In this document: positions 60,622-62,233 of the stretch, piece by piece
Position numbering within the stretch: position 1 is the stretch's first letter
Layout: each line of letters begins with the position of its first letter
IMG/VR virus record: IMGVR_UViG_3300046171_000252
Span: 62,001 to 126,000 of that record
Direction: 5' to 3' (one strand)
Length of the DNA: 64,000 nucleotides
Notes under the pieces: model-generated
Seen by the model: only the letters and a program-made list of their open reading frames with translations
Told to the model about the DNA's origin: nothing
The model's database searches: none
Program-made: the position numbers and the translations under genes

Positions 60622-61001
60622 CCGAATTAAAAGACTGGCTCAACTCTATCAATCAAACAAAGAAGCATTTGATTGATGAAGACCCCTTGGTTGAAAAAGA
60701 ATATCCTCCTTATATTATCAACCGTTGTTTCTCCGGACATCTTGATGCAATTATGTTTGCAAACGAGATGAACAAGTATCATTTTCTTCCAAAGAAGATG
60801 CAGTATGATTTTATGCTAAATAGTCTGAGGAAAAAGAAGAGATTTTCTCCCTGGCTCCGAAAAGATAAAATCAAAGATCTTGATTATGTCAAACGTTATT
60901 ATGACTATAGTAATGAAAAGGCACAACATGCTTTGAAGATCCTAACAACAGAACAACTTAATTTTATTAAATCAAAATTTGATACTGGAGGAACAAGATG
61001 A
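60618..61001 (+). CDS. gp62: Clamp loader small subunit gp62
   Basis: YPPYIINRCFS, ANEMN, RKKKRFSPW. Confidence 0.92.
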   Translation: MTELKDWLNSINQTKKHLIDEDPLVEKEYPPYIINRCFSGHLDAIMFANEMNKYHFLPKKMQYDFMLNSLRKKKRFSPWLRKDKIKDLDYVKRYYDYSNEKAQHALKILTTEQLNFIKSKFDTGGTR

Positions 61002-61438
61002 GTGTGGTTCAAGAACCTATTGTGAAATGGTCGCCGGAGCAGATGGTTGAAGTGGTTCTTGGAGAACCTGATGACTTTCTCAAAGTAAGAGAAACACTAA
61101 CAAGAATTGGTGTTGCATCAAGAAAAGAAAAGAAGATTTATCAATCTTGTCATATTCTTCATAAACAAGGTCGTTATTATCTTGTGCATTTTAAAGAACT
61201 CTTTGCACTAGATGGTAAACATGCCAATATCACAGTTAATGATGTCCAACGACGTAATCGCATTGCTCAATTACTTGCTGATTGGGGTCTTATTAGCATC
61301 GTTAGTGCTGATAAAATACAAGATATTGCTCCATTGAATCAGATTAAGGTTCTTTCTTATAAAGATAAGCAAGACTGGATTCTTGAAACTAAGTATAATA
61401 TTGGGTCCAAAAAGAAAAAGGTTGAAGAAACCGAATAA
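60998..61438 (+). CDS. regA: Translational repressor RegA
   Basis: DDFLKVRETLTRIG, YQSCHILHKQGRYYLVHFKELF. Confidence 0.96.
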   Translation: MSVVQEPIVKWSPEQMVEVVLGEPDDFLKVRETLTRIGVASRKEKKIYQSCHILHKQGRYYLVHFKELFALDGKHANITVNDVQRRNRIAQLLADWGLISIVSADKIQDIAPLNQIKVLSYKDKQDWILETKYNIGSKKKKVEETE

Positions 61439-61445
61439 AAATCTA

Positions 61446-61468
61446 CGGGGTTCCTACCCCGCTTTTTT
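61446..61468 (+). terminator. Intrinsic terminator after regA
   Basis: cggggt-tcct-accccg followed by ctttttt. Confidence 0.8.
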
Positions 61469-61477
61469 ATGCTTTGT

Positions 61478-61485
61478 TATAAATA
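61478..61485 (+). promoter_or_regulatory. Late promoter TATAAATA for hsp20
   Basis: Exact consensus. Confidence 0.75.
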
Positions 61486-61489
61486 ATCA

Positions 61490-61543
61490 TGGATGCCTTC
61501 GGGGTCCACAAAACACAAACTCGCTTTTAAAGGAGCTACAATC
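61490..61543 (+). promoter_or_regulatory. ROSE-like RNA thermometer in the hsp20 5' UTR
   Basis: cUUCGg hairpin 61490-61508; UCGCU (61521-61525) pairs with SD AAGGAG (61530-61535), leaving a bulged G. Confidence 0.6.
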
Positions 61544-61978
61544 ATGGGAAACCTTGCACGGTATACTGCTGCGGACCTACCTGCGTTGATGGAACGCATA
61601 AATAGGAATAGCATAGGAATGGATGAATACTTCGATAGGTTGTTTAATCTCCACGAAACAACGAAGAATTATCCACCATTTAATCTAGTCACGGTCAGCG
61701 CAGTAGAATCACGACTAGAACTTGCACTTGCAGGATTTAGAAAAGCAGAAGTAAATGTCTACACACAAGACGGAAAACTCTTTGTCGAAGGACAAAAAGA
61801 GGACACCGAATCAGAAACGACTTATGTCCACAGAGGAATGGCTCAACGATCTTTCACCAGATCTTGGACACTGGCAGAGGATACGGAAGTTAGATCAGTT
61901 GAATTTGAGGATGGGTTGTTAAGTATTGTTCTGGGAAGAATTGTGCCCGAACATCATCAAAAGAAGGTCTGGTTTTGA
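61544..61978 (+). CDS. hsp20: Small heat-shock protein Hsp20
   Basis: YPPFNL, LELALAGF, YVHRGMAQRSF, DGLLSI; SD-supported ATG at 61544. Confidence 0.93.
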   Translation: MGNLARYTAADLPALMERINRNSIGMDEYFDRLFNLHETTKNYPPFNLVTVSAVESRLELALAGFRKAEVNVYTQDGKLFVEGQKEDTESETTYVHRGMAQRSFTRSWTLAEDTEVRSVEFEDGLLSIVLGRIVPEHHQKKVWF

Positions 61979-62001: not shown

Positions 62002-62047
62002 GTTGATACAGAAGTGTATCAACATGATACACTATACTCTATATAAT
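62002..62047 (+). promoter_or_regulatory. Overlapping inverted repeats of TGATACA plus TATAAT box
   Basis: gttgataca-gaag-tgtatcaac and agtgtatca-aca-tgatacact share the middle arm; TATAAT at 62042-62047. Confidence 0.55.
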
Positions 62048-62071: not shown

Positions 62072-62155
62072 ATGAACTTCACCACCACTGCCTTAGCAGC
62101 TGGAACTCTAATGACTATTTTTATTGGAGTTCCCATTACTACATTTGTTTCTTAG
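62072..62155 (+). CDS. Hydrophobic micropeptide, 27 aa (MNFTTTALAAGTLMTIFIGVPITTFVS)
   Basis: Perfect SD AGGAGG at 62061-62066; single TM-like segment. Confidence 0.6.
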   Translation: MNFTTTALAAGTLMTIFIGVPITTFVS

Positions 62156-62158
62156 CAC

Positions 62159-62233
62159 ATGGAAATCTTAGCAACCTTTGTCATTTTTGGCGCAGTAATG
62201 AGTGGAGCATTTGCACTCACCCCTAAAAAATAA
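62159..62233 (+). CDS. Hydrophobic micropeptide, 24 aa (MEILATFVIFGAVMSGAFALTPKK)
   Basis: Starts 3 nt after the previous stop; TM segment plus basic tail. Confidence 0.5.
   Translation: MEILATFVIFGAVMSGAFALTPKK

What the first reader, a model, noticed from the sequence alone, without database searches (positions are those of the whole stretch)
61478..61546. ROSE-like RNA thermometer gating a late-promoter phage hsp20
Seen: terminator, TATAAATA, a stable cUUCGg hairpin, an unstructured A/C linker, then CUCGCUU-uua-AAGGAG, where the SD is paired with a single bulged G. Established: ROSE thermometers on bacterial small-HSP mRNAs use U(U/C)GCU opposite the SD with a bulged G. Inference: the phage senses temperature at the translation level to dose its chaperone during assembly. 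The stem is short, consistent with melting at seawater temperatures. It may match an existing Rfam ROSE-type family.
Basis: partly seen in the sequence, partly recalled or inferred. Interest (0 to 1): 0.7.

Follow-up and report, generated by a model that had tools for sequence, protein, structure and literature searches.

The report
ROSE-like thermometer on phage hsp20
The short leader in front of this cyanophage's small heat-shock gene has the same two-hairpin design as the bacterial ROSE RNA thermometers that hide the ribosome-binding site in the cold. Hundreds of marine phages keep it almost letter for letter, so these viruses probably tune a chaperone to temperature, though nobody has measured this.

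Summary

A single-sequence fold is not significant. The comparative evidence is strong:
- 265 of 269 distinct cyanomyovirus hsp20 leaders keep CUCGCU opposite the SD. This holds even where Hsp20 is only about 36% identical and where the promoter type differs.
- Hairpin I shows clear compensatory changes. Hairpin II is nearly invariant, with variable loops and a few compensatory changes.
- Rfam ROSE_3 gives its best hit in the whole 207.6 kb phage genome exactly here (22.2 bits, E 0.0025), but this is below the gathering score of 43.
- The sensor hairpin differs from that of E. coli ibpA by one stem pair.
- The protein is IbpA-like (class A).
- Versions also occur in pelagimyophage-like contigs and in a Pseudomonas jumbo phage.

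Best reading: this is a minimal member of the short ROSE-like thermometer class, inherited with an ibpA-type gene. Its predicted sensor hairpin is about 3 kcal/mol weaker than the E. coli one and about 2 kcal/mol weaker than the P. aeruginosa one, so any switch should lie at lower temperatures.

Temperature control itself is untested. The upper G-C clamp of the Pseudomonas elements is missing. Autoregulation by Hsp20 is a live additional possibility. I found no paper reporting this element.

The parts
60998..61438 (+). regA (translational repressor), the upstream neighbour; context only
   Evidence: Pfam Translat_reg, E 2.2e-45
61446..61468 (+). Intrinsic terminator after regA, which isolates the hsp20 transcription unit
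   Evidence: Terminator scan: 6-pair stem with 5 G-C pairs, then a T-run. Its sequence varies among relatives.
61478..61485 (+). TATAAATA, the T4-type late promoter consensus; predicted +1 at 61491
   Evidence: Read directly. Relatives carry TATAAATA, nTAAATA or TATAAT at the same distance from hairpin I. The TSS is not mapped.
61491..61507 (+). Hairpin I: GGAU-G-CC[UUCG]GG-GUCC, 6 pairs with a bulged G at 61495, at the predicted 5' end of the mRNA
   Evidence: 100% paired in 53 sequences, with 17 double-change cells. Covariation also. Loops alternate between UUCG and GNRA. Same design as hairpin I of ROSE_3.
61508..61519 (+). Single-stranded A/C-rich linker
   Evidence: Across relatives: A 61%, C 26%, U 11%, G 2%; length mostly 9-12 nt
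61520..61526 (+). Anti-SD CUCGCUU, containing the ROSE motif UCGCU; bulged G at 61523
   Evidence: CTCGCT is present in 265 of 269 distinct leaders. Same register as E. coli ibpA.
61527..61529 (+). Loop UUA of hairpin II
   Evidence: Loop sequence and length vary among relatives while both arms stay fixed
61530..61535 (+). Shine-Dalgarno AAGGAG, paired with 61520-61526 except G61523
   Evidence: 98.5-98.8% of cells paired. RNAalifold predicts this helix de novo.
61536..61543 (+). 8-nt spacer; variable among relatives and not part of the helix
   Evidence: Spacer length is 4-9 nt and its sequence varies
61544..61978 (+). hsp20, an IbpA-like (class A) small heat-shock protein of 144 aa
   Evidence: Pfam HSP20. 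36% identical to E. coli IbpA. It keeps Y34, R93 and R97.

Best explanation
The roughly 53-nt 5' UTR of hsp20 (61491-61543) is a minimal two-hairpin ROSE-like RNA thermometer. It is related to the leaders of proteobacterial ibpA genes and was probably inherited together with the class A sHSP gene.

Hairpin I is a stable, temperature-insensitive stem-loop at the very 5' end. It likely protects the mRNA and helps the weak sensor hairpin to fold.

Hairpin II pairs CUC-G-CUU with AAG-GAG, leaving G61523 bulged, so the SD is hidden from the 30S subunit in the cold. As temperature rises the short helix opens and Hsp20 is translated.

The upper stem is U-A where enteric and pseudomonad elements have G-C. 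The predicted switch therefore lies about 20 C lower, within ocean temperatures.

Shown here: the anatomy, the conservation, the covariation in hairpin I, and the likeness to validated ROSE elements. Inferred: the TSS, the melting behaviour, and the effect on translation.
For: 1. Conservation beyond the protein. 265 of 269 distinct leaders from 376 cyanomyovirus loci keep CTCGCT near the ATG, and the SD core is AGGAG in 260 of 264 parsed leaders. The Syn19/S-RIM2/S-ShM2 clade has Hsp20 only about 36-38% identical, yet scores 63-70 bits with the window-clade model. Terminator, promoter type, loop and spacer all vary.

2. Structure.
- Hairpin I is 100% paired with compensatory changes. Its frequent U-G pairs fit only the sense-strand RNA.
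- Hairpin II is 98.5-98.8% paired and is predicted de novo by RNAalifold.
- The P-HM2 clade changes the top pair U-A to A-U.
- The L099-L101 clade rebuilds 3 bp - bulged G - 3 bp - triloop from other letters in a shifted register, and L100 turns a U-G pair into C-G.
- The rival MFE register is broken in 70 of 128 sequences.

3. Likeness to validated thermometers.
- ROSE_3 gives a full-length hit with the AUG aligned: 22.2 bits, E 0.0025 for the whole genome, next hit E 2.95.
- Other leaders hit ROSE_3 at 28.6 bits and ROSE_2 at 24.3 bits.
- The E. coli ibpA sensor is CUC-G-CUG[AUUU]CAG-GAG, against CUC-G-CUU[UUA]AAG-GAG in the phage.
- A P. aeruginosa-type ibpA leader (ROSE_3, 69.2 bits) has the same overall plan.
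- A broad phage model gives only three hits in 13 kb of E. coli and Pseudomonas DNA, and all three lie on sHSP leaders.

4. The gene. It is IbpA-like. Cyanophage sHSPs group with bacterial class A, not with host sHSPs (PMC3827213).

5. Energetics. Hairpin II at 37 C is -1.1 kcal/mol, against -4.1 for E. coli and -3.3 for P. aeruginosa. The phage hairpin at 20 C is -3.1.
Against: - No experiment exists. The TSS is not mapped, and the RNA contigs were uninformative.
- The Rfam score is well below gathering (22.2 against 43).
- The narrow phage model does not find the Pseudomonas element at all, and the broad one finds it only weakly (12.3 bits).
- Hairpin II is almost invariant. Support from covariation rests on a few events, and some of it comes from an alignment fitted to the model.
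- The upper G-C pair flanking the ROSE/SD core is replaced by U-A, or missing, in the phages. PMC3669281 found that opening this pair in P. putida abolished temperature-dependent repression.
- The sensor is very weak, so it could be largely open at host growth temperatures.
- A partition-function model of the full leader showed no temperature-dependent exposure of the SD. P(unpaired) stayed between 0.14 and 0.21 from 4 to 50 C.
- The single-sequence z-scores are unremarkable.
Confidence: 0.65

Rival explanations
1. The leader is an operator for autoregulation. Free phage Hsp20 binds its own 5' UTR and blocks translation, and clients (unfolded or aggregating proteins) titrate it away, as shown for E. 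coli, Cedecea and Vibrio IbpA. Temperature would then be secondary. This can coexist with the thermometer.
For: - IbpA represses its own translation through the ibpA 5' UTR, and this needs R93, an aromatic residue at position 34, and a positive charge at 97 (PMC10474464).
- The window Hsp20 and all marine phage Hsp20s aligned keep R93, Y/F34 and R/K97.
- The top of hairpin I (bulged G next to CC/GG) is conserved from Pseudomonas ibpA to cyano- and pelagiphage leaders while the lower stem covaries. That is more conservation than a simple stabiliser needs.
Against: No binding data exist for any phage Hsp20. R93 may be kept for other reasons. The RNA determinants of IbpA binding are not defined, so no site could be tested here.
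Confidence: 0.3
2. The leader is a constitutive expression cassette: a 5' stem-loop against RNase attack, a CA-rich enhancer and a strong SD. The CUCGCU/SD pairing is too weak to regulate and is a relic of the ibpA ancestor.
For: - Hairpin II is only -1.1 kcal/mol at 37 C and -3.1 at 20 C.
- The upper G-C clamp is missing.
- Modelling shows no opening with temperature.
- The z-scores are not significant.
Against: A relic would decay. CUCGCU is kept in 265 of 269 distinct leaders, while the neighbouring linker, loop and spacer vary and the protein falls to about 36% identity. The pairing register is also rebuilt from other letters in the L099-L101 and pelagiphage-like clades.
Confidence: 0.2
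3. The conserved letters are a DNA-level protein site. The same sequence in S-PM2d was predicted to be a Pho box for host PhoB.
For: PMC10976474 lists a putative Pho box upstream of S-PM2d hsp20 that overlaps AAACTCGCTT.
Against: - The same paper reports that this fragment did not bind PhoB and that the gene was not regulated by phosphate.
- The site lies downstream of the promoter.
- The U-G pairs and compensatory changes point to sense-strand RNA.
- The leader is the same behind different promoter types.
Confidence: 0.02
4. The leader is an operator for the neighbouring RegA translational repressor.
For: regA lies directly upstream here and in many relatives.
Against: - The AUG-proximal region, where T4 RegA sites lie (my own knowledge), is the most variable part of the leader.
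- In Syn19, S-ShM2 and S-RIM2, hsp20 is not next to regA, yet the leader is the same.
- The conserved letters are G/C-containing, not AU-rich.
Confidence: 0.05

Closest known systems
Short ROSE-like thermometers of Pseudomonas ibpA (Rfam ROSE_3, RF02523; Krajewski et al. 2013, PMC3669281)
   Same: - Two hairpins in a 5' UTR of about 60 nt in front of an IbpA-type gene.
- Hairpin I is G/C-rich, with a bulged G below a CC/GG top.
- A single-stranded linker follows.
- Hairpin II has U(U/C)GCU opposite the SD with a bulged G.
- The AUG is unpaired.
   Different: - Hairpin I is shorter: 6 pairs, against 11 in the L460 alignment (the consensus shows 10).
- Hairpin II has 6 pairs with a U-A upper stem, against 7 with G-C, so there is no upper G-C clamp. 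It is about 2 kcal/mol weaker.
- The score is below the gathering threshold.
- It is carried by viruses, behind late-type or sigma-70-type phage promoters rather than a sigma-32 promoter.
E. coli ibpA ROSE-like thermometer (Rfam ROSE_2, RF01832)
   Same: The sensor hairpin is nearly the same letter for letter: CUC-G-CUG[AUUU]CAG-GAG-CUA in E. coli against CUC-G-CUU[UUA]AAG-GAG-CUA in the phage. The downstream protein is 36% identical.
   Different: E. coli has more and different upstream hairpins. Its sensor is about 3 kcal/mol more stable, with a nearest-neighbour two-state Tm of 68 C against 47 C.
Cyanobacterial sHSP thermometers (Synechocystis hsp17; Anabaena avashort and avalong; PMC4152365, PMC4477652)
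   Same: They control an sHSP gene by SD occlusion, and they occur in the host phylum.
   Different: hsp17 is a single hairpin of its own class. avalong is ROSE-like but has a bulged U. The phage element has the canonical bulged-G ROSE motif, and its gene groups with proteobacterial class A rather than cyanobacterial sHSPs (PMC3827213).
Phage lambda cIII RNA thermometer (my own knowledge)
   Same: It is a precedent for a phage mRNA whose translation depends on temperature-sensitive RNA structure.
   Different: It is unrelated in sequence, fold and logic. It switches between two alternative structures and favours translation at lower temperature. It does not control a chaperone gene.

Membership tests
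ROSE-like RNA thermometers | Located in the 5' UTR of a small heat-shock gene (class A / IbpA type) | tested here: met
   Pfam HSP20. 36% identity to E. coli IbpA. The literature places cyanophage sHSPs with class A (PMC3827213).
ROSE-like RNA thermometers | Conserved U(U/C)GCU anti-SD motif paired with the SD in the 3'-proximal hairpin | tested here: met
   UCGCU at 61521-61525 lies opposite AGGA. It is kept in 265 of 269 leaders. Pairing is 98.5-98.8% and is predicted by RNAalifold.
ROSE-like RNA thermometers | A single bulged G opposite the SD | tested here: met
   G61523 is the unpaired base in the only conserved register. The same position is bulged in the E. coli and P. aeruginosa elements. 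The non-canonical geometry of the bulge cannot be tested here.
ROSE-like RNA thermometers | One or more stable 5' hairpins upstream of the sensor hairpin | tested here: met
   Hairpin I is 100% paired with compensatory changes.
ROSE-like RNA thermometers | Reaches the gathering score of an Rfam ROSE model | tested here: not met
   ROSE_3 scores 22.2 bits against 43. The best relatives score 28.6 (ROSE_3) and 24.3 (ROSE_2). The whole-window gathering scan found nothing.
ROSE-like RNA thermometers | Temperature-dependent melting of the sensor hairpin and temperature-dependent translation | not testable with these tools
   Only nearest-neighbour energies are available. They fit a lower switching range but do not demonstrate a switch.
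Short pseudomonad ROSE-like subtype (ROSE_3) | G-C pairs flanking the ROSE-motif/SD core on both sides, with the upper pair acting as a clamp (PMC3669281) | tested here: not met
   The lower C61520-G61535 pair is present. The upper position is U-A (61525-61531, 61526-61530). The topmost pair is mismatched in some relatives.
Short pseudomonad ROSE-like subtype (ROSE_3) | Two-hairpin 5' UTR of about 60 nt, with the AUG unpaired | tested here: met
   The predicted UTR is 53 nt, with two hairpins, an 8-nt spacer and a free AUG. The TSS is inferred from promoter spacing only.
fourU thermometers | Four consecutive U paired with the SD | tested here: not met
   The register that uses the U-run (GCUUU/GGAGC) is the single-sequence MFE. 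It is broken in 70 of 128 relatives.

The most novel reading that the evidence does not exclude
The leader is a two-input sensor that lets the phage read the folding state of the infected cell. Temperature opens hairpin II. In addition, free phage Hsp20 binds its own leader and shuts translation off until unfolded host or capsid proteins titrate it away. The conserved bulged-G/CC-GG top of hairpin I might be the binding site. If so, a virus would carry a complete, self-contained chaperone feedback loop taken from proteobacteria and retuned for cold ocean water.
Probability: 0.22. Interest if true: 0.75.

Novelty: new member of a known kind. Interest (0 to 1): 0.6.

Why it matters
- RNA thermometers are known almost only from cellular genomes. 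A 2024 review still describes temperature-responsive viral RNA structure in phages as speculation (PMC10884466). No paper in the searched library links an RNA thermometer to cyanophages.
- hsp20 is present throughout the T4-like cyanophages sampled here (507 phage records match it), and these are among the most abundant viruses in the sea. A leader conserved better than the protein marks post-transcriptional control of this chaperone as important for infection.
- It also gives a simple, testable handle on how temperature, a main variable of a warming ocean, could feed directly into phage gene expression.
- For thermometer research it offers a natural series of very short ROSE sensors without the G-C clamp. 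These may define the lower limit of the design.
- Practically, Rfam models miss the family, and annotated hsp20 start codons in some phage genomes run through the leader.

Tried and rejected
- Single-sequence folding gave unremarkable z-scores and an MFE in a register that relatives do not keep. It is not usable as evidence.
- The full-leader partition function from 4 to 50 C showed no temperature-dependent SD exposure, because the model invents long-range pairings with the coding region. I used isolated-hairpin energies instead and say so.
- I laid RNA-seq to map the TSS. Only metatranscriptome contigs of related phages were available. They run across the terminator and promoter and carry no direction, so they are uninformative.
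- The search for close bacterial relatives of the gene returned only 5 loci. All are short contigs in MAGs of unrelated taxa that carry the phage gene and leader, so they are probably misbinned phage DNA.
- Sampling 151 Gammaproteobacteria for ROSE_3 gave nothing above the cut-off. A true member was instead found in a 'phage' record holding Pseudomonas-type ibpA DNA.
- Reciprocal search: the narrow phage model finds nothing on the Pseudomonas element and is weak on E. coli. The broader model gives weak but specific hits.
- The Pho-box reading is rejected on published EMSA and expression data.
- The RegA-operator reading is judged unlikely (see the rival explanations).
- Codon-position identity against leader identity is distorted by indels in the ungapped comparison, so I do not rely on it.
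- My first regex for hairpin I failed for technical reasons and was replaced by model-based alignments.

Full report
WHAT IS THERE

The window belongs to a 207,616-bp virus record. Its nearest named relative is Synechococcus phage S-SKS1, with Hsp20 98.6% identical and the region about 87.5% identical in DNA.

Downstream of gp62 and regA the order is as follows:
- an intrinsic terminator (stem 61446-61461, T-run to 61468);
- TATAAATA (61478-61485);
- five bases;
- hairpin I (61491-61507: GGAU-G-CC[UUCG]GG-GUCC);
- a 12-nt A/C linker (61508-61519);
- CUCGCUU (61520-61526);
- UUA (61527-61529);
- AAGGAG (61530-61535);
- an 8-nt spacer;
- ATG at 61544.

The ORF 61544-61978 is an HSP20/alpha-crystallin protein (Pfam, E 2e-13).

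With the usual T4 late-promoter geometry (my own knowledge), +1 falls on G61491, the first paired base of hairpin I. The 5' UTR would then be 53 nt.

IS IT MORE THAN CHANCE?

Folding the single sequence says nothing. The leader's MFE has z = -0.69 and the SD region z = -0.30. The MFE also uses a different register, GCUUU/GGAGC.

Other measures are clear:
- CTCGCT-N2-10-AGGAG occurs once in 64 kb, against 0.03 expected.
- Of seven TATAAATA sites in the window, only this one is followed by a stable 5' hairpin (-8.1 kcal/mol against -2.5 or weaker).

COMPARATIVE EVIDENCE

I collected hsp20 loci from IMG/VR with five different cyanophage Hsp20 queries, and from GenBank phages.

Of 376 loci with enough upstream sequence there are 269 distinct 70-nt leaders. 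265 of these carry CTCGCT within 45 nt of the ATG. The SD core is AGGAG in 260 of 264 parsed leaders.

The element is kept where little else is:
- The Syn19/S-RIM2/S-ShM2 clade has Hsp20 only about 36-38% identical to the window protein. Its leaders still score 63-70 bits with a model built from the window clade alone.
- The terminator, the promoter element, the hairpin II loop (2-5 nt beyond the arms) and the SD-ATG spacer (4-9 nt) all vary.
- The linker stays A/C-rich and nearly G-free: A 61%, C 26%, U 11%, G 2%.

Hairpin I is a proven structure.
- In 53 distinct window-clade leaders every cell is paired, with 17 double-sided changes. None of 500 shuffles reached this.
- In a broader model-fitted set, three of six pairs show compensatory changes and all cells are paired.
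- Loops switch between UUCG and GNRA tetraloops.
- The frequent U-G pair is meaningful only on the sense-strand RNA.
- The bulged G and the CC/GG top are essentially fixed.

Hairpin II is supported mainly by invariance.
- 98.8% of cells are paired in a MAFFT alignment of 128 sequences, but three of the six pairs never vary.
- RNAalifold on that unfitted alignment predicts exactly this helix.

The few informative changes fit the helix:
- The P-HM2 clade changes the top pair from U-A to A-U in six distinct leaders, although three others have A-C.
- Clade L099-L101 lacks CUCGCUU. It has GAC-G-CUU[AAG]GAG-GUC, the same 3 bp - bulged G - 3 bp - triloop plan in a shifted register. L100 converts its U-G pair to C-G.
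- One leader with SD AAGGGG keeps a U-G pair.

The rival MFE register loses its closing pair in 70 of 128 sequences.

The topmost U-A pair is dispensable in some clades. The conserved core is therefore five pairs, CUC-G-CU with AG-GAG.

RELATION TO KNOWN THERMOMETERS

An Rfam scan of 501 nt puts ROSE_3 (RF02523) on 61487-61549. The match is full length with the AUG aligned, at 22.2 bits (gathering score 43) and E 0.025 over all families. Searched over the whole phage genome, this is the best ROSE_3 hit at E 0.0025, and the next has E 2.95. Other leaders reach 28.6 bits (ROSE_3) and 24.3 bits (ROSE_2). None passes threshold, and the gathering scan of the window is empty.

Two positive controls show what the real thing looks like.
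- The E. coli ibpA leader scores 100.4 bits on ROSE_2. Its sensor is CUC-G-CUG[AUUU]CAG-GAG-CUA, against CUC-G-CUU[UUA]AAG-GAG-CUA in the phage.
- A P. aeruginosa-type ibpA leader, found in an unverified 'phage' record, scores 69.2 bits on ROSE_3. It has the same plan: a long hairpin I with a bulged G under a CCG/CGG top, an 8-nt linker, then CUU-G-CUGA[UAAU]UCAG-GAG.

Krajewski et al. validated these two-hairpin elements by reporter assays, toeprinting and structure probing. They showed that hairpin II alone senses temperature while hairpin I stays closed (PMC3669281).

The reciprocal searches are weak. The narrow phage model misses the Pseudomonas element. A broader phage model gives only three hits in 13 kb of E. 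coli and Pseudomonas DNA: the ibpB leader (18.6 bits), the P. aeruginosa ibpA leader (12.3 bits, full length) and the E. coli ibpA sensor hairpin (11.7 bits). All three are sHSP leaders.

The protein agrees with this. It is 36% identical to E. coli IbpA. Maaroufi and Tanguay found cyanophage sHSPs to be a clade next to bacterial class A sHSPs rather than next to host sHSPs, and proposed lateral transfer (PMC3827213). Gene and leader most likely travelled together.

Related leaders also precede hsp20 elsewhere:
- in pelagimyophage HTVC008M-like contigs, with UUGCU in CUUUGCUU(U) opposite AAGGAGG and a hairpin I with the same bulged-G top but quite different lower stems;
- in the Pseudomonas jumbo phage Cassandra.

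HOW IT PROBABLY WORKS

At low temperature hairpin II occludes the SD. Warming opens it and allows 30S binding. Hairpin I sits at the 5' end, stays folded, protects the transcript and may help the weak sensor fold. These are the roles discussed for the pseudomonad elements (PMC3669281).

Nearest-neighbour energies for the isolated sensor hairpins are as follows.

| Sensor hairpin | 37 C | 20 C | 10 C |
|---|---|---|---|
| Phage (window) | -1.1 | -3.1 | -4.3 |
| E. coli ibpA | -4.1 | -6.4 | -7.7 |
| P. aeruginosa-type ibpA | -3.3 | -6.0 | -7.6 |

All values are in kcal/mol. The two-state Tm is about 47 C for the phage and 68 C for E. coli.

This is model-based. The model ignores the non-canonical interactions known for the ROSE bulge. 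A partition-function run on the whole leader gave no clean opening.

WEAK POINTS

- There is no experiment and no mapped TSS. The laid RNA contigs came from related phages, crossed the promoter and had no direction.
- Hairpin II offers little covariation.
- The match is below the Rfam threshold.
- The upper G-C clamp is absent. In P. putida, opening that pair abolished temperature-dependent repression (PMC3669281). The element could therefore be leaky at host growth temperatures.

RIVALS

A Pho box was predicted over the same letters in S-PM2d. The fragment did not bind PhoB and the gene did not respond to phosphate (PMC10976474).

A RegA operator is unlikely. The AUG-proximal part is the most variable, and the leader is unchanged where regA is not adjacent.

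A purely constitutive stabiliser/enhancer cassette does not explain the fixation of CUCGCU.

The serious additional possibility is IbpA-type autoregulation. E. coli, Cedecea and Vibrio IbpA bind their own 5' UTR and repress translation. This needs R93, an aromatic residue at position 34 and a positive charge at position 97 (PMC10474464). All marine phage Hsp20s aligned keep these residues. Cassandra has K at the R93 position. This could act together with the thermometer.

VERDICT

The ROSE-like interpretation is supported as to kind and probable ancestry. Temperature control is the most likely function but is unproven.

The element is a new, virus-borne, minimal member of the short ROSE-like class. 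It is widespread in marine T4-like phages, unrecognised by Rfam, and as far as the searchable literature shows, unreported.

Noticed in passing
window 61478-61485; loci L001-L427, upstream of hairpin I: The promoter element in front of the invariant leader changes type among relatives. Of 291 distinct upstream regions, 41 have TATAAATA, 105 nTAAATA, 100 TATAAT (often TGTATAAT) and 18 a TATATA type, always at the same distance from hairpin I. The timing class of hsp20 may therefore differ between phages while the leader stays fixed.
   Followed up: partly
L018, L037, L039-L042, L052, L055, L056, L111 (about 50 nt upstream of hairpin I): About ten contigs carry an extra long G/C-rich hairpin between a TATAAT element and hairpin I. 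Its 5' arm contains an SD-like AGGAGG paired with CCUUCU. It could be a third ROSE-type hairpin, a decoy or an attenuator.
   Followed up: no
L081:998-1495 (P-HM2); window 61493: The annotated P-HM2 hsp20 CDS starts 72 nt upstream of the SD-supported ATG (L081:1070) and reads through the leader. In the window the longest ORF likewise starts at 61493, inside hairpin I. These are probably mis-called starts.
   Followed up: partly
L344, L428-L450 (pelagimyophage HTVC008M and relatives); L345 (Pseudomonas phage Cassandra): hsp20 genes of non-cyanobacterial phages also have ROSE-like leaders. In the HTVC008M and L439 types UUGCU lies opposite the SD (the L443 type has CUGUCU instead), and hairpin I has the same bulged-G/CC-GG top but a different, covarying lower stem.
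   Followed up: partly
L337:6899-6981 (-), E. coli ibpA-ibpB intergenic region: Both phage-derived models give their best E. coli hit on the ibpB leader, which has a hairpin (GCUC-G-CC..GG-GAGC) built like phage hairpin I.
   Followed up: no
L084:1175-1372 (P-SSM2, between regA and purL): There is a manA RNA motif (RF01745, 181.6 bits) in the regA-hsp20 interval of P-SSM2, where purL is also inserted. The window has no Rfam family above threshold.
   Followed up: no
window 62072-62155 and 62159-62233 (+): Two tiny hydrophobic ORFs (27 and 24 aa) lie directly after hsp20, behind a TATAAT-like promoter (62019-62047) and a strong SD. Neither matches any PHROG family.
   Followed up: partly
L324-L328 (MAGs labelled Formosa, Acidibacter, Thermoplasmata, Psychromonas, Actinomycetota): The only 'bacterial/archaeal' genomes with a close hsp20 relative (67-84% aa) are MAGs. 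The two checked (L325, L327) carry the phage leader as well (R1 83.6 and 44.5 bits). Four of the five matches lie on short contigs; the Thermoplasmata one lies on a 5.16 Mb record labelled chromosome. These are probably misbinned cyanophage DNA.
   Followed up: partly
L460 (OQ572409.1), L346 (MG065686.1): Two 'UNVERIFIED' phage records hold bacterial ibpA-type DNA: a P. aeruginosa-type ibpA with a bona fide ROSE_3 leader, and a stretch whose R1-matched segment reads the same as the E. coli ibpB leader. They are likely host DNA or contamination.
   Followed up: partly
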